Assembly (NCBI GenBank): GCA_977016875.1
Contig: CDRNST010000062.1
Span: forward strand, 3,906,001-3,970,000
Origin: Pavona decussata
Taxonomy: Eukaryota
DNA: 64,000 nucleotides
Direction of reading: 5' to 3'
The notes under the pieces are model-generated. The model worked only from the letters and a program-made list of their open reading frames with translations. It ran no database searches and was not told the DNA's origin. Numbering within the stretch: the stretch's first letter is position 1; each line of letters starts with the position of its first letter. Shown here one piece after another: positions 4,456 to 46,198 of the stretch. The position numbers and the translations under genes were made by a program.

Positions 4456-5292
4456 TTAAAGCAATACCGGGACATAAGCCACAGGTCGGGATAAGTCCTG
4501 CTGTGGTTGCCAAACTCCTGACACTCTCTGGCCGCTCAGTTCTGCAGTAGAGACTGTGTATCCACTCGGCTTGCTTGGCGCTTCGCTACTTGAAGCTGTT
4601 GGACTGGGCGAGCCGTTTGCCATTGCCCCACCGCGCGTCTCGTCCACGCTTGAAATTCTCTGTTGGATTTGCGAGGGTAGAGCGGGTTGGAAAGCTTGGC
4701 TGGTGTACAGTGCCCGGTTGTGGCTCATCACATCCGCGGGACGAAATGAGTGCGTTGAATCCAAAGAACTAGCGAAGAGCTGACGTGATGGCGGAGTGAC
4801 GGAGTGGTGACTGTTAACTGCGGTTACATTCGGGTAGATGACTGGATAGCCCGGCGAAACGGAGTGATGAAACGCTGTTGCCCCATTTATTTTGGAATAC
4901 ATTGGATCCGCGGACAAAGCAGTTGAATGAGCTATTGTTTGAGGCAATTGATTCGTTGGGAATTTGTCAACCGCCATCATTGGAGCACTGTATGGGGAAA
5001 ACATCGGGGCTGATAGCTCTTTCTTCTGCAGTGATTTCGGCTTGCGTCGCTTCGGTTTGTACTTATAGTCCGGATGCTCTTGGATGTGGATTGCTTGCAG
5101 TCGTTTCGCCTCGGCCACGAACGGTTCCTTCTCGTCTTGCGAGAGCATTTTCCACTCTGCTCCGAGCCGTTTGCTTATCTCAGAGTTGTGCATTCGCGGG
5201 TTTATCGCCGCGTACTGCTTTCTCTTGCCGCGACTCCACACCATAAACGCGTTCATGGGTCTCTTAATATGCCCTTCGTCTTGCTTACCCAT
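4456..5292 (-). CDS. SoxB: Group B Sox (HMG-box) transcription factor, intronless, SoxB2/Dichaete-like
   Basis: 278-aa ORF with an N-terminal HMG box [15 protein letters not shown]...[15 protein letters not shown]...[26 protein letters not shown]. It has a very short N-terminus, an S/P-rich tail and a single coding exon, as is typical of SoxB. The exact paralogue cannot be assigned without a tree. Confidence 0.96.
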
Positions 5293-29446: not shown

Positions 29447-32400
29447 ATGGCCTTTGAACGCTTTAAAAACAAGATTGTCGACGCGTTTTCCAATATTTCA
29501 GTCATCACCTACGCGCTCTGTGTTGTCTTCGGTACTGGCTCGTGGATTGCTATCAATGGGCTTTGGGTTGAATTACCTATAATTGTTCCAGAAATCCCGG
29601 AAAGCTGGTCTCTCCCGTCCTATCTGACCGTAATGATTCAACTGGCTAACATAGCTCCACTGGCGTTTACACTGGGAAACAAATTCTTTCCACGTGTTGT
29701 TTACGAGGTTCCCGTCATTTACATCAGCGTCCTTGTGGGCATTATATCATGTGCTTTGTTGTCGTTTTTCTGGAAAGAAACAAGTTACATCGCAGGCGCC
29801 GAGCGAAGCACAGCGCTGTTGGTCTTGTGTTTCTTTCTTTCCATGGTAGACTGCACTTCGTCTGTCGCGTTCATACCGTACATGGCCATTTTCCGAGAAG
29901 TGTACATGAGCCCATATTTTGCTGGTGAGGGGCTAAGCGGTCTTCTTCCAAGTCTCGTGGCATTAGCACAGGGCGTGGGAGGGGGGTCACATACCCCATG
30001 TGTGGTCAGCCCCACGGAACCTCCTGTGAACACTACCAATGGAACGTCAGGGAATGATACTTCCACCGGTAGCTGGGGTCCCAATCCCAAGTTTTCTGCA
30101 GAAGTGTTCTTCTGGTTTTTGAGTGCTGTGATGATGGCTTGTGGTTTGGCTTTCCTGGGGCTGAATTACCTCCCTGTGGCAAAGCGGCAACAGGTGAATA
30201 AATCTGGCTCAACCAGCGCTTACCAAGTCACTAAGCCAGGTGAACCAGCTATGGAACTTGCCTATGCAGAAGAGGGCATGAAGAAAGATGACCATGTTGT
30301 TCAAAATGGGTCCACAACTGAAGTTACTGTGCTACTGTTGGTGATTGTAGCCATAGTTGGTGGCTTGAGTAATGGGGTAATACCCGCAATCCAGTCCTAT
30401 TCCTGCATACCTTACAGCTATTACATCTATCATCTGACGCTCACTCTGTCAGCCATTGCCAATCCTGTCACATGCATTGTGTTTCCATTTGTCCGCACGA
30501 CATCGACGATGATCATAACTGTGCTGACAGTGGTGTACATTGGTATGTGCACATACATTATCGTCATTGCATCACAGAGTCCTGCAGTGTTGTTGAAATG
30601 TGAAGATTCTGGTGCTGCATTGATTGTAAGTAGAATCTTATTGTTTTAATTTTTCTTGGTGTTTTGATCATCAATTGTCACGTAAACATGAGATTTCAAC
30701 AAAAAGTGCACCGACACAGCAGGCGGTTACAATATATGTGCAACAAAACAACCATCACAGAACTTATTTTTTCATCAGTTAGAATGTTAAGCATGCAAGT
30801 AAAAACATAACCGCATTGAAAAGTGCTCCACAAGAGAAAAGTGTAGGAGTGGGTGTTAAACAAAACCAAGAAAAACGAACTTTTATTCATGAAAATTTCA
30901 TGAATACTTAATATTCTTGTGAGATTGTGTGAAAAATCCTGTTAAATATATGCATGCTGGTCGTATATTTATTTTTTCAATGCTAATTATAAACTCATCA
31001 ATGTTGAAAGGTCACAAGTTGCATAACAGGTCTTTTTCAAACTTTACCGCCCCTCATTGTTTTTGTTCACAAAAGATTATCATTAGGTTCTTTAATCATT
31101 TCAATTTTTAACAAAAGGTTTGCTGAAGATGCAGTATCTAGTGTTTAAATTAGCAAAAACATTGTCTTTGGATAGATCATTTTCTCAAACATGACATTCC
31201 AGACAAGTAAAAATCAGTCACCATGGCGTTCCAATGTTTTAAAACCAGACATAGTTTGTTTTCTGTTCATCCCTTGTTTTCCCCCAGTTAGTGGCTTTAG
31301 CAAAAGAGTCTGGTGGGTCAAGCATCAAAACTTTGCAAACAAAGAACTCAAATTTAAAAAAAAACATGCTTCTGACCAGCCGGCTATTTCACTGGTGTGG
31401 TCAAGGGGTAGCCTCCAACGCAGACGTCCTTAGGGGTTCTTCCTAAGGGGTTCAAACCCCTAAGGACATCTGCGTTGGAGGTTAGGTCAAGGGGTTAAAC
31501 TTGGGACTTTTTGTCAAACAGTTACAGCTAGCCATCAGCGCAAGATTTATGAGGTTATTAAGTCTGGCACCAGCCTTCAATCTGACCACTCACCCACATT
31601 TCTTTCTAAAGCTATTTTAAATGCTCAAGATTGTATATGATTCTAATGCGCAAACCTTGAAGAATAAGCTTACAACAATTCACAATTCGAAGGGGTGCCT
31701 GGAAAAAAAGTGGCCTAAAGTTAAGTTCTGAAAAATTTCTAGATTCTCCCTCCAGATTCCCTTTTATTCGCTTCTGAAACAAATTAAAGGAGAATTTAAC
31801 CTTACATCAAAAGTCACCTAGGACCTTATTCCATGTACCCCTTCATTTGTTGTGACTGTTTTCTTAAGTGCTGCACATACATTCTGCACATCTCCAGATG
31901 CTCAGGTTCCTATGGGTGGTGCCTACCAATACAGGGATATTTTTGCGCTGTTTAAAACTATGCGAAAAGAGCAGAACTTAGCAAGAACTTTTAGTATCAA
32001 AAAAAAAAAAAAATTGGGGGTAACCATGCATTTTTCAGACATTAATTAAAGCTTTGCTTCGTATTTTACTGCTGTTTTGAATTATCGTTGCTTTATTATC
32101 TCTAAAAAGAGGAAGGCTACTCCCAATTTATTCTTCTTATTATTTTTTGGATTTCCATCAACCCTTACTAAAATCTGCTTTTCCCACATAGTCGTAAACC
32201 GTGCTAAAATACTTCTGTATTTGTAGGCACAGTCTTTCAAAGCCTAAAGTTATTGTTCCTAACTTAAACTTTGTCTAATAGGTTGTGATCAGCGTCAGTG
32301 CTGTTGCTGTCGTAACTTATGTCAAAGTTGCCATTGGAGGAATCATGCGTGCAAAGGGTCGCAATTATCTGCTATGGTTTGGAGCTGTCACTCAAATCGG

Positions 32401-34993: not shown

Positions 34994-35675
34994 TTATTGT
35001 TCGTGTGGGACCAGTGCAAGGTACTGTTGGACTTTCTCAGCCAGATCTGATTTCTTTTCTTTAGATTTCACGGTTACACCTCTCTTCTTGAGCCAGTCGA
35101 CTAAAGTAGCAGCGTTAACCTTGTGTAGCTGAAGTAAGATATATAATAGTCTGAGCGAGCTATTACTATGAAGGCAGAAGTACATGTAATTATAAGTGGA
35201 AAGCAAATAAAATGAGCTCTACATTTCGTTGGAAAACACCAAGTGAACCGCCTTCACCGGATACGTGTGGACGGAAGGCCAATTCGTAAAGAAAAAGTTG
35301 CGTTTTCAAACGAAAACGGGTGAGTGTGCCGAGACGGGGCCTGAGAAAGTGGAAACACGATGTCCAATTTTTATGTCTCTTTCTCGACTTCAACATTGCC
35401 GTTATGAATTCAGCCTCCAGATCGTAAAGCCACATTATGCGAATTAAATGACTTGGAAATAGAATAATTGCGATTTTGTAATAACGTTTGTAGCTTTTTA
35501 TTGGCGCCTTAGTCGTTGCTGCTTTACTAAGTTTCCTGAAAGTACATGTACAACGACCGCACCGCAGCCATGAAAGCTGCACATTAAAACGTTTCAATTT
35601 ACACATTTTTGGTTAGCAAGGCCTCACTCTGGCCTCGCGTGGAAAATAAGCCACTGAATGGGTACTAAACTACAA

Positions 35676-35711
<36 letters not shown>

Positions 35712-38700
35712 AATGATAATAATTAATTACTTCTAGAGCGCTATTCAGTACAAAGACAGATCAATGGCGCTTTACAATCGATGTCTCTAGGATTTGTAAA
35801 AGTACTAAAATTGAAAATGGTAATACTGATAATTTGACTTTATCCTACCTGGTCATTTGTTGCCAGCTCCTTAATATCAATACCTTCTTGGATCTTTGGC
35901 TTTGGTTTTGGCTTTTTCTGGGGTGGGTCCTCAGGAGAAAAATCAATGACCTAATACAACAAATTATAAAAATACTGAGAGCTAAAAAGCAAACAAAAAA
36001 AAAAAAAAAAAAACGAAGAATTCTGCACAAGCAATCTAATTTTCTCACTTAAGTAATTGATGATTTTATCCGTTTCATCTCGGACTATAATTTCCCTGTT
36101 TCTTTCAGCCAGTCTTCCCTCCACGGCTAATAAGCTCCCTCTCAATCCCTCTGAAAAAGTAGCAAGACCCGCCTCTCATCTATAATTCCTTTGATCTTTT
36201 TGATCATCTAAATAAGAATACTCGTAGCCGTCTCCTATTTCCTTTGGGTGAAGTTGGTGATTAAGGAACATGCAAATCAATTTGTTACAGAACTGATGCA
36301 TTCATTTTATACAAGACATATATTTCGTTACCTTTTTAAGTAATAAAGAAGAAAATTCATACTTATACACTGAACGTAGGCATTGAAAAATGTAATCAGC
36401 GGAGCCAGTATCCCTCGAAGTACTAAATTTCCCCTTACAACGGTGAGCAGACAGGGTTAGCTAGACTACAAGCAGTCAAGTAAATGTCCCTTTCATGGTG
36501 GTGGTGACTGTGTATATTAAAATCAGTCCAAGGAAAACGATTACATCGATTAACAAGGTATATGTACCTGTCTCTTTCTTGTCCGATCAACATTTGCCGA
36601 ATGAAACTGGGCAGGAAAAGACTCGTGCTGTAGTAGCTGAAGAGGAGCAGCGTGTTCGCCAGGTCCACGTGTTGAAACAGATAGTGAGCGTGTTGGTGTA
36701 TCGCTCGAACCTCGTTCCCACAAAGAATTAATATCCCAGATACCTTCGAACTCCTGTGGGGTCGCGTTCTTCTCCCTCTGTCTCTGACTGCTGGTAGGTA
36801 CTGCTTGTGTTATGACAAGCCCTGGTCTACTCTGGGGTAAACGCTTCACAACTTGTGTCGACGAATCAGCACTTTGTGCCATCGTAGTAGCATTTCTTTG
36901 AGCGACAGTAGGAGAATTCGTAAATCTTTCAATCATCCGCTCTAGGCTTGAATTTGAAGAATGGTCATCAACGCCATATTCCATTGTTCCATTGATGCCT
37001 CCTCCATTGGTTAGTACGTAATCCGGGCTAGCTCTATGGACTCTATGCTGGGATAGAGCGTGCCCTTGGCTCGTGTTTTCCATACGCCGGGCTGACTGTA
37101 GCGAAGCCAGAAGTGTAGAGTTTTGTGTTTGTAGTGAGTTACCAACACGCGCTTGTGAGACAGTAGCTGTTAGCGTTGGTTTGTGTCTGCTAGGCTGCAC
37201 TCTCTTCTTCGAAAACGTGGGGATGAGTCGAGTTGCAGACGTAGACCAACTTCGGCTACAAGAAACTGAGCGCTCAGTGTCAGGGTTTACAGACTTCACG
37301 ACGCGGTTGCTGGTAAAACACGGAACAAAGCGAGTTTCCGAAGAAAGGCAAGAAGATATTGGCGTGTAAGGGGGGGTTGTCCTCGGTTGATAAGTGGAGG
37401 GCGTTGTCATCACTTGGCTGACCAAGGGGGTGCTCTTCAGTTGATTGATAGTTTTATCATTTCCTGTTTGGAATTCAGTTTGGGAAGATGCAAGCTGTGA
37501 TGATATGAACGACTCCGCAGCAGAAGCGTTTGCTTGCCTTGCAACGTCTTGCGTACGCTGTTCTTGAATGGTAAAGGGTCTGCAGTGGTTCATCTGAGCT
37601 GGTTCTGTTCTTGTTAAGTTGCTGTAGTTTGCGTGGGTTGCCTGTTGAAGTCTGTTTGTCGGGTAGATTGGAGAAGACGTCAAAGTCAGAGGTGTCCCAC
37701 ACACGGAAGGCATGCGGCAGGATAGATCTCTTAGAAAAGAATTGAAAATCAGCTGGTGATCACAACGCGGTGACACTAAAGCTTGAGTGCTACGGATGCA
37801 GCTCGCTGGATATCTAGTTTATTCTTGTTAAGAAGTTTTTTCATTAATCACCAATTGACACGACTCACACGAGTTGTCACATGATGGGTGCTTAGAATAT
37901 CCATTTAGGCTAGAGCCCTTCACGCATCAAAATGCATGTATAGATGATGCCCTTCTCCCATCAAATAAATAAATATAGAGACATAACGCATCACGTGTGA
38001 AGCAGTATTGTAAATATCCTTAAACATCTCGCACTATTTCAAAATTTGAAAATGGGGGTATATAGCTACGCATTGTATAAAGCTTTCAAACACAAAACAA
38101 TGTATGTGATTTTTTTTTTTCAAAATTGAATCTGATTATCTCTGAAAAATGTGATTATCCTGGTTTTCTTTTTGCATTTCAATAACACTGGCTAAGTTCT
38201 TCTTTTCCCGGATGGTTACAATGAATGAATTAGTACTGAGTCACGGCCAATAAGATTTTCTCGCACCAATTCCCGAGATGCGGAGAACGCATGCGCAGTA
38301 GCAAAAGGAGACGTCGTCTTTAACGCCCGAGGGAGATCAGTCTGCCAATCGAATCCGTGGCCACCAAATATCAAGCTCTATACTATAACGGCTTTTGAGT
38401 ATTTATAGTGGTAAAAGGGTGTTAAACTTAAAAGGGTAACATGGTGCTTCTAAACTATCACTTCATATGTAGGATACGTGAATACTTTGCCTCTGATGTA
38501 AAAGAAATGGACATTGTAGAAAACATTTTCTTCTGGTGGCAGTCTGTATCCGTACTGTGTAGAAACAAATGAACAAACAACAACAACTCTATGCTTTAAC
38601 TCGCGGGAAGTCTAATATAATCTGGTAAGTGACAGACAACAGATGTCAGTGCCTCAGAATGGAATTAATGGAAGTCTCTAAAGCCTTGATGATCAAACAG

Positions 38701-39749
38701 AGAAACGATTCAAAATGACAACTTTTGTTGGAGGGGTAGGTGGTCAAATCAGTGTCAGTTTAGAGGCTTTATCTTGACTATCGAGTATTAAAGCACGTCT
38801 AGCTCACTCACTCGGGGAACTCTTCAGTGGCTGTCATTACAAATAGAACATCGTAACACTTCCTTCCAGTTACTTTAGCGCCAGAAATTCACCTACCATA
38901 AGTTTCCAATGTTTTCTTAGATCTTCGTAGCTTGTAAACGGACTGTCTTCTGGAAGCTGATGGGTTATGCTAAAAATTCGTCCTTTCTTTAAGCTAGGAT
39001 AATGGGAAACATGAAAGAAAATGATTAACAGTGTTATTCCAAGCCTTGGACGAGAGTTAAACATAAGATCGCTCAGCATGCACAAGTCAGTTTCGAACTC
39101 TATTTTGTAGGCTAAACTTTAAAACTGAGCCTTTCTGCGTAAAACTATTGATATGGTCTTGCTTAATTTGAAGAACTGTAGGGAGCCGCAAAACTGGTTT
39201 CTTTGTGTCACAATTAATCTGAGCTCGAGTATACCATGACAGGTAGCTTACCTCGGCAGCACGAAACACAAGTCGTCCGCAATAGCTGCGTCACTAATCA
39301 CGGCTTCGCTGTTGGTGTTGAACTCTTCCAGTGCTCTTGTTGAAGCAGTGAAATGTTCTGGCTGAGAACAAATATGGCAACATCACTTTAAGAGATTACA
39401 GTGAGTACTATTGTTCCAAGATCGAGATGATTTTTTTTTCGTTAGAAGGGAGTCTTATAAATTAAACGTTAACTTCAGATTCATTTCGCTAAAACTTATT
39501 CAAGAGAGATGTGGTTTGAAATCCGTCTCTTGGCAGTGTCTGAATAGACAAACTTTCGAGTTCTCTGAAGCGTTGTCCCAAAATTACATTCAAATTGCCT
39601 CATATAATGAATGCCATGTATATCTTGTTTACATTTTTTTTATACCTTACACGGCGTTAACTTCAGAGAGTAAGCTTGTAATCCAATGCAGATTTTGTCG
39701 CTAATGGTTACTTCCAAAACTACATTCAAACAAACAAACAAACAAATAA

Positions 39750-39792
<43 letters not shown>

Positions 39793-42400
39793 AATACTGA
39801 TTATTACAAATGAATAAATTGCCGGGAATCGACCTAGCTGATGACCAATTGAGGCCAGGAGCCAGGAGCCGATGAAGCACCTGACTCATTCCTGCCGAGA
39901 CAAATCAGCTTTTAACCACAAAGACTAAAAAAAAAAGGTATTTCTTAGTTTCAAAACAGGATTTTTGGCATGATTAAACAGTTGATTTCAGTTTTGTTAT
40001 AAGTTCTTTAGAAGTTGACTGACACGTACAGATAAAATGGAGATGACGCGATCACAGAGGTACATATGCACACGTGCATGTTATAAGAAAAAATTCGCAG
40101 TAACAACTGAACGCAACACTCAGTTCATTTAAACACATCTACTCATATCAGCTGTGACTTGTACTTACTCACTGCATTTAGTTTAGATTTCTCCAGCATG
40201 AAGTCACGCCCTAAAAATATCAAGAACACTGGATAGTTTAGTCAGTTCATCATAAACTCCCCACTCTAGGAAAACAACAACAACAACAAAAGTTTCACAA
40301 AGCAGGAATTCAAGAAGGCTGGGGGTGCATTCATTACCGTACATTTCCGAATATGATCCCCCACTCCCCCAACGAATAAAAGACATTGCCATCCAAACAT
40401 ATAAGCTGCACCCCCCCCCCCCTCCCGCCCCGCCACCGCTAATCTCGGACGCTGAAATCCTATGGACTGTAAGTGTTAACTGTTTTAGTATGCTTGCTTG
40501 CAGTATGCATGAAGTTTTTTCTTAGCACGACTCTTCTTCTGTCAATTGAACCCGACTGCAACTGAAGTTGAAAATAAAGCTTTCAAAATACATACGAGAT
40601 TCTTACTCTCGAAAACTTTGTCTTCAACTTTCGAATCTTATTCAGCAGGTAGAAGAATAGTAAATTAATTGACTGTCGGTTTATAAAGCTTTAACTCCCC
40701 AAAATTTCCACTGATACCAACTCCTACCAGAGAATTAGCTACTAAAACCACAACGTAATATTCGGAATTTCACTGGTATTACTAGTAGTATGCAAGCGAA
40801 ACTAAGAGAAATAGATTTCGGTTTGCACTGAATAGCCATTTCAGCATGTTGAGGTATTCTTTAAGTTGTAATTGTCCTTTAATCATCATCATACATGTTC
40901 CAGTCAAAGTGCACATCAAGAGGAATTCAATTTCTCATACCTTGTACAAGGAAGTCACCAGCCTTGTTCCAAAGCGGTGCAAGTTTCTGTTTCATGGTGA
41001 AGGAAAAACAAAACTGAAACAGACTCTTCGTCAAATCTACTGGCTCTGTGTTCTGTTTATAGATAAACACATTTGTTTAATTTATACAAGAGNNNNNNNN
41101 NNNNNNNNNNNNNNNNNNNNNNNNNNNNNNNNNNNNNNNNNNNNNNNNNNNNNNNNNNNNNNNNNNNNNNNNNNNNNNNNNNNNNNNNNNNNNNNNNNNN
41201 NNNNNNNNNNNNNNNNNNNNNNNNNNNNNNNNNNNNNNNNNNNNNNNNNNNNNNNNNNNNNNNNNNNNNNNNNNNNNNNNNNNNNNNNNNNNNNNNNNNN
41301 NNNNNNNNNNNNNNNNNNNNNNNNNNNNNNNNNNNNNNNNNNNNNNNNNNNNNNNNNNNNNNNNNNNNNNNNNNNNNNNNNNNNNNNNNNNNNNNNNNNN
41401 NNNNNNNNNNNNNNNNNNNNNNNNNNNNNNNNNNNNCGTATATTGTCAATGCAAAATGTCCTGGCTTTAAAGGCCACTCAAAGGAATTTTTCGACCTATA
41501 AAGGAACTAGTATGCCTGCGCCCCTCACTGAAGAAATACACCATTCTCATTGCATAAATAAGTTACCTGTATGTTCAGTTTTTGCAGGAGCTCTTGAAAT
41601 TTAGAGGATTGAATGATTGCTTCCTATAAACGAATCCCAAAATACAACAGATTAAATATTTGATATACCTACTACAACAATGTTTACAAAAGTAAGTTGC
41701 AACAACTGATTAATTGGTAAAACTTCTTTTCTCCTTTTTTCGTTTAAACAAATTCAACTTCACAAGTCATATGAAAAGATAAATCATAAATGAACAAACA
41801 AATAAAATAATTACTGAATGTCACCGAATTTTCAGAGCTATTTACATGATGTTAAAGAATATTGTAAGGAATGTTAATGTTTTGAATTGAACAGATTTTC
41901 AACCGTAATGGTAAGCCTGTTAAAAAAAAGTCATATATATTCGATTCCTTCTTGCCTGTGTTACAAGAAATAGCTGATTCCTTTCTTCCAACAGTGGAGA
42001 TACAAGAACTTTGGGCTCCGTAAAGATCAGTTCTCTGTGAAGATAAAAAAAACTTAAGCTTGAATGAATTTATTCGACACGGCATTGGCGGGAAACGTTT
42101 GAACCGGGCTTTATAGACGTAAGTTTAATACGCCTAACAAAAAGAAACTATGAAATATCTTCTGAGCATTTTCGAACATACGTTTAAAGCTATTTAGCTG
42201 TTCAGATAACAGTATAATATGTCTAATATCCGTCACAAATGTAAAAAGAGTTAAAAAGACGCTTACCTGCAACACATTGGCTGAATAGAGCTTATTTTGT
42301 CGTTCATTTCTGTTTGTATGGTAGCCTTTATAGCTGTCAGTTCGTCCAGATTTGGCAGAGGAGCGAAAAACAGACCGAAGAAGCCATCATGGTTTCTCAT
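34994..42400 (-). CDS. C18orf63: C18orf63/DUF4708 family protein with C-terminal SAP-like motif; 12 exons
   Basis: Phase-consistent exons: 42400-42267, 42034-41956, 41623-41567, 41052-40941, 40210-40169, 39719-39646, 39361-39252, 38993-38897, 38554-38478, 37813-36568, 35950-35849, 35128-34994. The peptides LFFAPLPNLDEL, QFCFSFTMKQKLAPLWNKAGDFLVQGRDF, CFVLPSLKKGRI, SPFTSYEDLRKHWKLMYGYRLP, FTYPASCIRS and SFLRDLSCRMPSVCG are collinear with human C18orf63 as recalled ([64 protein letters not shown]). Confidence 0.88.
35675..35720 (+). repeat. (GAT)n/(AAT) microsatellite, probable retroposon tail
   Basis: About 12 GAT units grading into AAT, flanked by an L2-like 3' stem-loop on the minus strand. 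Confidence 0.85.
38020..38322 (-). mobile_element. Kolobok-like non-autonomous element copy
   Basis: Minus strand begins TTAAAGACGACG...TTTTGCTACTGCGCATGCGTTCTCCGCATCTCGG, homologous to the copy at 25039. Confidence 0.5.
39728..39794 (+). repeat. Compound (AAAC)n(AAAT)n microsatellite
   Basis: Read directly; abuts the acceptor of C18orf63-like exon 6. Confidence 0.95.
41093..41436. other. Assembly gap (within C18orf63-like intron 3)
   Basis: Run of N. The flanking exons join in frame, so probably no exon is missing. Confidence 0.99.
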
Positions 42401-42536
42401 TTTTCAATTTGTCCGACTCTTAAAATATTTAATTCGAAGCACCAAATGCAAGGCCTTGCTTAGAACGAAACCTTTTTGCGAAGTATTCAGAAAACAGCTT
42501 CTCTCCTTCCTTCGCTCTATCGGGGAACGTTTGCCG

Positions 42537-42558
42537 TTTGGCGGGAAATATTTCGCGC
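42537..42558. promoter_or_regulatory. Clustered E2F-type sites upstream of the C18orf63-like ATG
   Basis: TTTGGCGGGAAA-TA-TTTCGCGC, about 140 bp upstream of the start codon. Confidence 0.55.
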
Positions 42559-42587
42559 CTTTTTTCAGGGAGCGCGGTGGTCCGCGG

Positions 42588-42740
42588 TGGTCCCGAGGGA
42601 AACAGTTAGTTTTGTCATGGATCCTAGAAAGACCAGTCTTTCTAGGATCCATGGTTTTGTTTTCCAGAGAGTCCTGTTCGTCTCGGGAAACATCAGGACT
42701 CGAGGGAAAACAAAACTAACTATTTTACTGAGGGACCATA
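42588..42740. mobile_element. Palindromic MITE containing a 38-bp CAT..ATG insertion (42616-42653)
   Basis: Outer arms GGTCCC-GAGGGAAACAGTTAGTTTTGTTTTCC and GGAAAACAAAACTAACTA...GAGGGACC. The inner perfect 18-bp hairpin is flanked by a GTTTTGT duplication. Confidence 0.75.
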
Positions 42741-42857
42741 AAATAAGTGCTTTGTTATATATTTAGACTTTCCCTTCAACAATCACAGCAAAACAAACAA
42801 ACAAATAAACAAACAACTGAGAGGGCTACAACTGCGGAATTGTATCCCGGTCGGGAT

Positions 42858-43060
42858 TAGTCTCCTTCGCAGCCGCTCGGGCCGGCCGGAGTCACGCAAC
42901 GCTCCCCGTCCCCACGCAATGACAACTAAGCGAGACGCTCATTGGTCCAAGCAAACAAAAGCGCAAAACAAAGGGAAAGGAATGTATGTCGGCTTGAAGC
43001 AGCCGCGTGGGGACGGGGAGCGTTGCGTGACTCCGGCCCGAGCGCCTGCGAAGGAGACTA
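42858..43060. mobile_element. TAG..CTA MITE with 9-bp TSD (AcademH-like), nested in an older element (~42758-43160)
   Basis: About 60-bp TIRs TAGTCTCCTTCGCAG...CCCCACGC and GCGTGGGG...CTGCGAAGGAGACTA. GGTCGGGAT is duplicated at 42849-42857 and 43061-43069. Confidence 0.88.
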
Positions 43061-43573
43061 GGTCGGGATTTGGTCGGGATACATTTGTATTTGATCAGGG
43101 ACACGTGACCAAGAATCAACCAATCACACTGCTCGCTTTGTTGAGTGAAAGTCTAGGTATAGAGAAGATATCCATTCAGGGGTATCGGCTACATACTGTT
43201 GAAATCATCTTTCTCTCTGATTTACCACTGGCTTTAGGCTGACTATTTCAATGCACGTTATTTGTAATGCATTATTTGTATAAAATAATGAGGTACTCGA
43301 TGAGGGTGCGTGTTAGCTACTCCACAAGGTTCCAAACACAATTTTAGGTAAGCTTAAATTGGATTTGTTTCTTTAGACTTGGTGTTACGAATTTGTTTGG
43401 TATTCTGCGCTAATCAATTCGAACTTTCATCTCCCCCTCCCCCTCCCCCCCCATGCCAGGTGTTCATGTGCATTTGACCATTTTCCGTGGCTGGGAATAG
43501 AGCAGTTTGATGCAAAACGCCTTCCAGAGGGCGGGGTGGGTAAAATGGAATTTACACCTTTCTTCCTGTCTGG

Positions 43574-43643
43574 TAGGCTCGATTTCCAGCCGTTTTGGGA
43601 GTCCGGTATCGCGGGCTCCCAAAACGGCTGGAAATCGAGCATA
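43574..43643. mobile_element. 70-bp TAG-ended MITE with 9-bp TSD
   Basis: Arms TAGGCTCGATTTCCAGCCGTTTTGGGAG and CTCCCAAAACGGCTGGAAATCGAGCATA; flanks CCTGTCTGG and CCTGACTGG. Confidence 0.8.
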
Positions 43644-43747
43644 CCTGACTGGCGGAATACGAGTGGTTCCTGCCCCATAGTCGAGTTTAGGGAAAAAATT
43701 GTCGCTTTTGTGAGCGATTGGCTCACCAAAAATGGTCTCCAGAACCT

Positions 43748-44464
43748 TAGCCTGCGTAGCAAGCGTCACGCCGTACAAACGAATCTGACCGCGCGAAAAT
43801 TGGGGCGAGAGCGAAAAATCGGCGGATAGGGGTGGGAGTGGGGAGGTGAGGGAACGCTTGCCCGAGGCCGAAGGGCTCCCTCGCCTCCACACTCCCACCC
43901 CCGTCCGCCGACTTTTTGCTCTCGCCCCAATTTTCGCGCGGCCAGAATGCGGAAAAATTCCTTCGTACGGGAACGTCCCCGGGGAGGGGGGGGGGGGGTA
44001 CTCCCATAAGTGGGCTATATAGGTATGTGCCGCGGGATAGGGTATGTTTTTTGACGTTCTCAGTCCTTAAATAGGGTATCATTTTTTCCTCATTTATCAA
44101 CGCGTTCCTGGATTAGTCCTTAGATAGGGTACCTAAATTGTATCAGTTAAATTGAAGCTTGTAAGCGCCACGTTTTACGAAAAAGAAATGGGTTTTTAAA
44201 ACTGAAGTGTCCGCTGAAGTATAAGAAAAGCGATTTTCATAGAGATTTGTGTTTATCCGTGCACATTAGCCGTTGTTTGGGTCCCTTGAATAGAGTGTCA
44301 TTTTTCGGGTTCAGTCCTTAAAAAGGGTATCCGTTATCCCTTCCTTTATCCTTAAATAGGGTCAGGGTTCGAGAACCTTCGCGGCACACCCCTATCGAAA
44401 ATTTTCGGGAGCACCCCCCGCCCCCTTCGGGGGGGGGGGGGGGGAACGCTTGCTACGCAGGCTA
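43748..44464. mobile_element. TAG..CTA MITE with 9-bp TSD, interrupted by a poly-G element (~43977-44445)
   Basis: TIRs TAGCCTGCGTAGCAAGCGT and ACGCTTGCTACGCAGGCTA. CCAGAACCT is duplicated at 43739-43747 and 44465-44473. Confidence 0.88.
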
Positions 44465-46052: not shown

Positions 46053-46198
46053 NNNNNNNNNNNNNNNNNNNNNNNNNNNNNNNNNNNNNNNNNNNNNNNN
46101 NNNNNNNNNNNNNNNNNNNNNNNNNNNNNNNNNNNNNNNNNNNNNNNNNNNNNNNNNNNNNNNNNNNNNNNNNNNNNNNNNNNNNNNNNNNNNNNNNN
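46053..46198. other. Assembly gap
   Basis: Run of N. Confidence 0.99.

What the first reader, a model, noticed from the sequence alone, without database searches (positions are those of the whole stretch)
37690..42400. DUF4708 region resembles an Argonaute/PIWI N-L1-PAZ lobe with no MID-PIWI
Seen: CFVLPSLKKGRIFSITHQLPEDSPFTSYEDLRKHWKLMYGYRLPPEENVFYNVHFFYIRGKVFTYPASCI. Known: PAZ domains run [strand]-I..I....P.S.F..(S/T)F.DY(Y/F)...Y...L/I.....L.V......YLP.E.C. The upstream GRDF...LEVTISDKICIGLQ resembles the linker-1 beta hairpin. Inference: a stand-alone PAZ-like nucleic-acid end-binding module joined to a ~380-aa S/T/Q/R-rich disordered linker and a SAP domain. It could be an undescribed component of RNA silencing or DNA-end processing.
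Basis: inference. Interest (0 to 1): 0.7.

Follow-up and report, generated by a model that had tools for sequence, protein, structure and literature searches.

The report
Stand-alone Argonaute N-lobe protein in coral
This coral gene is the ortholog of the uncharacterised animal protein C18orf63 (DUF4708), and its conserved N-terminal 325 residues are predicted with high confidence to fold like the N-L1-PAZ-L2 half of an Argonaute with no MID-PIWI half, which gives a widespread, meiosis-associated orphan family a first testable structural identity.

Summary
A 12-exon gene on the minus strand (42400 down to 34994) encodes a 753-codon C18orf63/DUF4708 ortholog in a stony-coral genome. The N gap (41093-41436) lies inside intron 3. 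Spliced contigs from three public runs join 41052 to 41567 across it, and the reading frame is kept.

I folded the closest complete ortholog instead (Montipora, 80% identical) with a 79-sequence alignment, giving pLDDT 94.7 and pTM 0.90.

- **Sequence methods:** they see none of this.
- **Architecture:** no homolog has MID or PIWI. A roughly 380-aa S/T/Q/R-rich linker, a basic patch and a sub-threshold HeH/SAP-like motif follow.
- **Distribution:** every homolog that carries a species name is an animal, from cnidarians to mammals. Vertebrate papers place the gene in meiotic germ cells.

I found no paper linking the family to Argonaute. Nucleic-acid 3'-end binding is inferred, not shown.

Earlier notes from this scan on the same window concern only the C-terminal SAP end. 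The scan has not found the Argonaute-lobe reading before on other DNA.

The parts
42267..42400 (-). Exon 1, with ATG at 42400; start of the N domain. Transcript contigs run on upstream to at least 42450 (5' UTR).
   Evidence: tblastn with P0025/P0048; Pfam DUF4708 profile positions 3-39; joint 42034/42267 in spliced contigs
41955..42034 (-). Exon 2 (N domain; the conserved RELIFTEP motif)
41567..41622 (-). Exon 3 (N domain)
   Evidence: joints 41622/41955 and 41052/41567; aligns to P0048 74-90
41093..41436 (.). Assembly gap (N run) inside intron 3; it does not touch coding sequence and was not filled
   Evidence: N run; the joint 41052/41567 skips it in runs X1, X2 and X4; no ortholog residues are missing
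40940..41052 (-). Exon 4 (end of N domain and start of L1; the LAPLWNKAG motif)
40169..40209 (-). Exon 5 (L1; the GRDF motif)
   Evidence: (contig pieces of X3)
39646..39716 (-). Exon 6 (L1 beta-hairpin, LEVTISDKICIGLQ)
   Evidence: strands E137-147 and E150-161 of the model
39252..39361 (-). Exon 7 (start of the PAZ-like domain)
   Evidence: Pfam DUF4708 162-197, E 9e-6; PAZ-like model
38897..38993 (-). Exon 8 (PAZ-like core: a strand, a loop with conserved F, and a helix with invariant W)
   Evidence: Pfam DUF4708 196-232, E 5.5e-10
38478..38554 (-). Exon 9 (PAZ-like: the YGYxLP motif and the last strands)
   Evidence: Pfam DUF4708 228-262
36568..37813 (-). Exon 10. The first ~190 nt encode the end of the PAZ-like domain and the L2-like segment; the rest is a ~360-aa S/T/Q/R-rich, poorly conserved linker. 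The 3' boundary is inferred from a GT donor and ortholog alignment and is not covered by laid contigs.
   Evidence: joint 37813/38478; composition S 14%, T 11%, R 8%, Q 8%; 36-42% identity between coral genera against ~80% in the N lobe; donor read
35849..35950 (-). Exon 11: basic KKPKPKPK patch (NLS-like). Boundaries are inferred from AG/GT sites and ortholog alignment.
   Evidence: conserved KKPR.KP block in the cross-phylum alignment
34994..35128 (-). Exon 12: HeH/SAP-like helix-extension-helix motif and the stop codon
   Evidence: tblastn 65-79% to orthologs; Pfam Ish1 E 5.7e-4 and HeH E 0.07, both below gathering score

Best explanation
The region encodes the N-terminal half of the coral ortholog of C18orf63 (Pfam DUF4708). 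That half is a divergent, stand-alone Argonaute N-terminal lobe made of an N domain, linker L1, a compact PAZ-like domain and linker L2. It is closest in fold to the N lobe of the Mediator subunit MED13. No MID or PIWI domain follows, so the protein cannot anchor a guide 5' end or slice. Instead the lobe is joined through a ~380-aa disordered, net-basic S/T/Q/R-rich linker to a basic NLS-like patch and a C-terminal HeH/SAP-like motif. Shown here: the gene structure, its splicing, family membership, the fold, the absence of a C lobe, and a distribution from cnidarians to mammals among the named homologs. Inferred: the protein is nuclear. The HeH/SAP-like tail holds it on duplex DNA or chromatin. 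The PAZ-like module carries half of the family's most conserved positions, mostly aromatic (F222, W232, Y236, G237, Y238, Y262 in Montipora numbering), and captures a single-stranded nucleic-acid 3' end or an equivalent ligand. By analogy with its vertebrate orthologs, it acts in germ cells around meiotic entry.
Confidence: 0.72

Rival explanations
1. The fold is the same, but the lobe is a protein-protein scaffold as in MED13. The PAZ-like cleft and the L1/L2 faces would bind peptides, possibly segments of the protein's own long disordered linker or partner proteins, and no nucleic-acid end is bound.
Confidence: 0.3
2. It is one half of a split Argonaute. The lobe would dock in trans onto a separate MID-PIWI-type protein, as APAZ, SiAga1 and AfAgo-N do with short prokaryotic Argonautes, rebuilding a bilobed guide-binding machine.
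Against: Short Argonautes are described as exclusively prokaryotic (abstract of PMC11370952), and I know of no animal MID-PIWI-only protein. The prokaryotic partners lack PAZ, whereas this lobe has one. No partner can be inferred from eukaryotic gene order: the nearest recognisable gene on the 3' side is a riboflavin transporter.
Confidence: 0.08
3. The Argonaute likeness is a modelling or search artefact or a convergence, and DUF4708 is an unrelated alpha/beta domain.
For: Sequence identity to the matched chains is only 6-14%. TM-scores over the whole lobe are low (0.26-0.47) with rmsd 5-9 A. No profile method finds the link.
Confidence: 0.05

Closest known systems
MED13 / MED13L (Argonaute-like subunit of the Mediator CDK8 kinase module), N-terminal lobe
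   Different: MED13 goes on to MID and PIWI domains and is bilobed, whereas DUF4708 stops after L2. MED13's disordered region sits between PAZ and L2; here it follows L2. No Med13_N or Med13_C Pfam match was found. MED13 lacks the HeH/SAP-like tail.
Long Argonautes and PIWI proteins (TtAgo, AaAgo, KmAgo, CpAgo, hAgo2, MILI, Siwi), N-PAZ lobe
   Different: There is no MID or PIWI, so no 5'-end anchoring, no guide channel and no slicer. Pfam PAZ, ArgoN and ArgoL1 are not matched. The PAZ-like domain is compact (~110 aa), with a loop plus one helix where I expect the hairpin-helix appendage of eukaryotic PAZ domains (inference from the secondary structure).
Prokaryotic stand-alone N-lobe proteins: APAZ domains of SPARTA/SPARSA/SPARDA/SPARHA, SiAga1, AfAgo-N
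   Different: They lack PAZ (PMC11788926), are encoded beside their MID-PIWI partner, and act in antiviral defence. DUF4708 has a PAZ-like domain, occurs in animals and has no known partner.
Dicer / DCL PAZ and Xrn1 PAZ/Tudor domains
   Different: Those PAZ domains sit in platform-PAZ-connector or nuclease contexts. Here the PAZ is flanked by Argonaute-type N, L1 and L2.
C18orf63 / DUF4708 family (PF15813)
   Same: This gene is a member. It shares the same architecture with named homologs from cnidarians, echinoderms, a hemichordate, a nemertean, molluscs, insects, a tunicate and vertebrates.
   Different: Nothing essential differs. The linker differs in length and sequence.

Membership tests
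DUF4708 / C18orf63 (PF15813) | Match to the Pfam model above gathering score (27 bits) | tested here: met
   One single exon already reaches 39.4 bits, and other exons reach 25.6, 21.5 and 13.5 bits at colinear profile positions. The 80%-identical ortholog P0048 scores 260 bits. The joined window protein was not scored because the exons were not joined.
DUF4708 / C18orf63 (PF15813) | Family-wide conserved positions and N-terminal domain followed by a variable linker and a conserved C-terminal tail | tested here: met
   All 24 positions conserved at >=90% are present. The cross-phylum alignment shows the same three-part layout.
Argonaute superfamily | N-terminal lobe: N, L1, PAZ and L2 domains in that order | tested here: met
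   Tested by predicted fold only. Model 7-325 maps to TtAgo 10-325.
Argonaute superfamily | MID domain (5'-end pocket) | tested here: not met
   The gene ends after a disordered linker and a 43-aa tail. No MID is found in 10 full-length homologs.
Argonaute superfamily | PIWI (RNase H-like) domain | tested here: not met
   No Piwi match in the window's exons or in full-length homologs.
Argonaute superfamily | Sequence-profile recognition (Pfam PAZ, ArgoN, ArgoL1, ArgoL2) | tested here: not met
   None of 79 members hits any of these at E<=10. Profile searches against PDB sequences find no Argonaute.
PAZ domain | PAZ fold (barrel plus helical appendage) | tested here: met
PAZ domain | Aromatic/basic pocket that binds a nucleic-acid 3' end | not testable with these tools
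   Model coordinates and residue-level superpositions were not available. The only evidence is that conserved aromatic positions F222, W232, Y236, Y238 and Y262 cluster in this piece.
MED13 family | Med13_N / Med13_C sequence families and a MID-PIWI C lobe bound to MED12 and cyclin C | tested here: not met
   No Med13 Pfam hit and no C lobe. Only the N-lobe fold is shared.
APAZ / SiAga1 / AfAgo-N stand-alone N-lobe proteins | N-L1-L2 fold without PAZ, paired with a co-encoded MID-PIWI protein | tested here: not met
SAP / HeH (LEM-SAP helix-extension-helix clan) | Match to SAP, HeH or Ish1 models above gathering score | tested here: inconclusive
   For the window's last exon, Ish1 scores 20.6 bits (cut-off 26.6) and HeH 13.3 bits (cut-off 28.9). 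Similar sub-threshold hits recur in sea-star, sea-urchin, snail and other homologs, and SAP itself appears only at E 0.087 in one.

The most novel reading that the evidence does not exclude
DUF4708/C18orf63 may be an ancient animal 'half-Argonaute' that reads nucleic-acid 3' ends on chromatin during meiotic prophase. In one version, the PAZ-like module holds the 3' single-stranded tail of a resected double-strand break, or the 3' end of a chromatin-bound small RNA, while the HeH/SAP-like tail holds the adjacent duplex. In another version, the lobe completes a bilobed Argonaute-like machine in trans with a separate partner.
Probability: 0.12. Interest if true: 0.9.

Novelty: new variant of a known kind. 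Interest (0 to 1): 0.68.

Why it matters
C18orf63/DUF4708 is conserved from corals and jellyfish to mammals. It keeps turning up in meiotic germ-cell expression modules next to SPO11, REC114 and SYCP genes, and it has no assigned fold or function. Pfam still calls it a DUF. None of about 8.4 million searchable papers contains 'DUF4708', and none pairs C18orf63 with Argonaute.

Recognising its conserved domain as an Argonaute N-L1-PAZ-L2 lobe without the catalytic half has three consequences:
- It adds a eukaryotic branch to the Argonaute superfamily beside AGO, PIWI and MED13. I know of no other eukaryotic stand-alone N lobe.
- It turns an orphan into a protein with obvious experiments: 3'-end binding, small-RNA or ssDNA co-purification, and meiotic knockout phenotypes.
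- It gives a natural comparison for asking what an Argonaute N lobe does on its own, which also bears on the unresolved question of whether MED13 binds nucleic acids.

Tried and rejected
- **Sequence-level PAZ or Argonaute detection.** I ran Pfam on the exons, on full-length orthologs and on all 79 alignment members at E<=10. I also ran phmmer and profile searches of all PDB sequences with the whole lobe and with the PAZ-like piece.
- **Word search with the long exon.** It mostly returned single-exon ORF fragments of coral relatives and yielded two full-length proteins.
- **Gap-disrupted gene or pseudogene.** Rejected: the gap is intronic, the transcripts are spliced, the frame is kept, there are no stops, and all conserved positions are present.
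- **Vertebrate or human-like DNA.** Rejected: the best matches are stony corals.
- **Joined protein.** The window's own protein was therefore not folded or scored as a whole, and the ortholog P0048 stands in for it.
- **Pocket-level analysis.** Not possible: model coordinates are not exposed.
Full report
**What is in the window**

The window is eukaryotic DNA at about 38-40% G+C. Its protein matches are best to stony corals: Oculina, Desmophyllum, Montipora, Acropora and Stylophora. The finding lies on a multi-exon gene on the minus strand.

Stop-to-stop frames and tblastn with two full-length relatives (P0025, a 718-aa transcript-derived pocilloporid protein; P0048, Montipora foliosa, 769 aa) give colinear exons from 42400 down to 34994. 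The 70-residue 'PAZ' string is the spliced product of four exons. The GRDF and LEVTISDKICIGLQ strings lie in two short upstream exons.

Pfam DUF4708 is hit by single exons at E 5.5e-10, 9e-6, 1.6e-4 and 0.045, at successive profile positions.

**The assembly gap, tested first**

The N run 41093-41436 lies between exon 3 (41567-41622) and exon 4 (40940-41052).

I laid Logan contigs of four public runs of the same coded organism on 37600-42450. The contigs are intron-less. They show joints at 37813/38478, 38554/38897, 38993/39252, 39361/39646, 40209/40940, 41052/41567, 41622/41955 and 42034/42267. The intron 39716/40169 is seen only as adjacent pieces of one X3 contig. Seven of the eight joints have CT..AC ends on the plus strand, which is GT..AG on the minus strand.

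The joint 41052/41567 spans the gap in three runs. The gap is therefore intronic and removed from the mRNA.

Phase arithmetic on the exon lengths (134, 80, 56, 113, 41, 71, 110, 97, 77 nt, then exon 10) reproduces the frame of each ORF piece. Ortholog residues 74-90 and 91-127 lie on the two sides of the gap with none missing.

With the three downstream exons (boundaries inferred from AG/GT sites and from ortholog alignment), the coding length is 2259 nt, or 753 codons.

All tests on the window's own sequence were made exon by exon. Exon-wise, the window is 265/332 identical to P0048, contains no stops, and keeps all 24 positions that are >=90% conserved in the family (the two split codons were read).

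**The family**

A profile of six N-terminal domains found 616 relatives (E<=1e-3) among 1.84 billion representatives.

Named members include:
- corals and a jellyfish
- sea stars, a sea urchin and a sea cucumber
- a hemichordate and a nemertean
- a mussel and a snail
- hemipteran, thysanopteran and hymenopteran insects
- Ciona, a catfish and a hedgehog

Many are labelled 'C18orf63-like' or 'DUF4708 domain-containing'. All named members are animals.

The cross-phylum layout is constant:
- a conserved ~310-325-aa N-terminal domain
- a long, poorly conserved linker with a few short conserved motifs
- a basic patch
- a conserved ~40-aa tail

None of ten full-length members has a MID or PIWI domain. 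The one extra domain, Exo_endo_phos in a catfish model, looks like a chimeric gene model.

**The fold**

I aligned 79 N-terminal domains (A2) with the closest complete ortholog, P0048:1-325, as the first row. AlphaFold2 without templates gave pLDDT 94.7 and pTM 0.90, and all five models scored 93.9-94.7.

*Foldseek against the PDB.* There were 101 chains at E<=1e-3. The top two were 8tqc_D and 7kpv_D (E 1e-9 and 5e-8); 7KPV chain D is Med13 according to PMC12477606. These were followed by Argonaute and PIWI chains from bacteria, archaea and animals at E 1e-6 to 1e-4, aligned over 300-400 columns.

*VIA-align re-alignment.*
|---|---|---|
| Human MED13 | 13.7 | 271 residues, 5.7 Å |
| Yeast Med13 | 12.3 | 263 residues aligned |
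| MILI | 10.3-10.7 | model 7-325 to 226-577 |
| KmAgo, CpAgo, TtAgo, AaAgo and others | 9-10 | model 7-325 to TtAgo 10-325 |

By my recollection of the published TtAgo domain limits (N to 106, L1 to 167, PAZ to 271, L2 to 337), the modelled domain covers N, L1, PAZ and nearly all of L2.

The low whole-lobe TM-scores (0.26-0.47) and the 5-9 Å rmsd fit a mobile PAZ.

**The PAZ-like piece on its own**

I cut the alignment to P0048:160-272 (A3) and folded it separately, giving pLDDT 94.4. Foldseek alone was not significant.

Half of the family's most conserved positions lie here: L201, P202, F222, W232, Y236, G237, Y238, L240, F252, Y262, P263 and C266.

From memory, several of these seem to fall where human Ago PAZ has its 3'-end-binding aromatic residues. 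That is a recollection, not a test.

**What follows the lobe**

The rest of exon 10 is S 14%, T 11%, R 8% and Q 8%, with 22% hydrophobic residues and a net charge of about +13. It is only 36-42% identical between coral genera, against about 80% for the lobe. This fits a disordered linker.

Exon 11 carries a KKPKPKPK patch. The last exon gives sub-threshold matches to Ish1 and HeH. The same sub-threshold HeH/Ish1 hits, and one SAP hit, recur in other phyla. 'HeH/SAP-like' is therefore reasonable, and 'SAP domain' is not established.

**What is known**

No paper in the searchable library contains 'DUF4708', and none contains both C18orf63 and Argonaute. The papers that mention C18orf63 list it:
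- among oocyte-enriched genes shared by chicken and human, next to SPO11, REC114 and SYCP1-3 (PMC9570461)
- among peri-meiotic genes of the human fetal ovary (PMC12055976)
- as a pre-leptotene marker in human testis (PMC12081002)
- as an uncharacterised gene of a meiosis component of testis single-cell data (PMC9792524)

Stand-alone N-lobe proteins are known in prokaryotes (APAZ, SiAga1, AfAgo-N). They lack PAZ and work with a MID-PIWI partner (PMC11788926). Short Argonautes are described as exclusively prokaryotic (PMC11370952). MED13 is the only other non-AGO/PIWI eukaryotic Argonaute-fold family, and its nucleic-acid binding is doubted.

**Reading**

*Shown.* The gene is intact and spliced. 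It is a DUF4708 member. Its conserved domain has an Argonaute N-L1-PAZ-L2 fold. There is no C lobe. The linker is disordered, with a basic patch and an HeH/SAP-like tail. Named homologs span cnidarians to mammals.

*Inferred.* I infer nuclear location, chromatin tethering through the tail, capture of a single-stranded 3' end or an equivalent ligand by the PAZ-like module, and a role in meiotic germ cells by analogy with vertebrates.

*Main rival.* The lobe may be a MED13-like protein scaffold that binds no nucleic acid. A split-Argonaute partner model is possible but has no candidate partner. An artefact is unlikely.

The finding is a new variant of a known kind. It is of real interest to people working on Argonautes and on meiosis, and it rests on predicted structure only.

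Noticed in passing
window 4456-5292 (-): An intron-less 278-aa ORF with a full HMG box (Pfam HMG_box E 1e-23), i.e. a Sox-type gene.
   Followed up: partly
window 29447-30649 (+): A 400-aa single-exon ORF that is a riboflavin transporter of the SLC52 family (Pfam E 2.9e-126). It lies on the 3' side of the DUF4708 gene and is the nearest recognisable gene there, on the opposite strand.
   Followed up: partly
window 36800-37300 (-), within exon 10: Short islands conserved between coral genera inside the otherwise fast-evolving linker, such as LPQ(S/T)RPGLVITQA and R(L/I)IP(T/M)FSKKRV. An I.P.F..K core is still visible across phyla. These may be docking motifs.
   Followed up: partly
P0043 (Desmophyllum), P0051 (Oculina), P0050 (Stylophora): Public coral gene models of this family are incomplete inside the conserved lobe. 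They lack exon 3 and/or exons 5, 8 or 9, and read into intron sequence instead. Family alignments built from them would blur the PAZ-like part.
   Followed up: partly
window 38248-38409 (intron 9): Contigs of runs X1-X3 pile up on about 40 nt (38271-38312) with unlike sequence on both sides. This is probably a short repeat shared with other transcripts, not an exon of this gene.
   Followed up: no
window 42035-42272: In run X4 the exon 1/exon 2 junction is reported as 42035/42272 with four other letters (GACG) between. In X1 and X2 it is 42034/42267. X4 also differs at several bases nearby, so this is probably allelic or population divergence rather than alternative splicing.
   Followed up: no
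window 42400-44100 and 46053-46198: Just upstream of the gene's start there are overlapping long ORFs on both strands, rich in P, G and R and without family hits looked up. They look like repeat or transposon debris. A second assembly gap lies at 46053-46198.
   Followed up: no
P0130 (Hemibagrus guttatus, 1034 aa): A catfish DUF4708 model carries an Exo_endo_phos segment inside the lobe (Pfam E 2.3e-6). This is most likely a retrotransposon fragment fused into the gene model.
   Followed up: no
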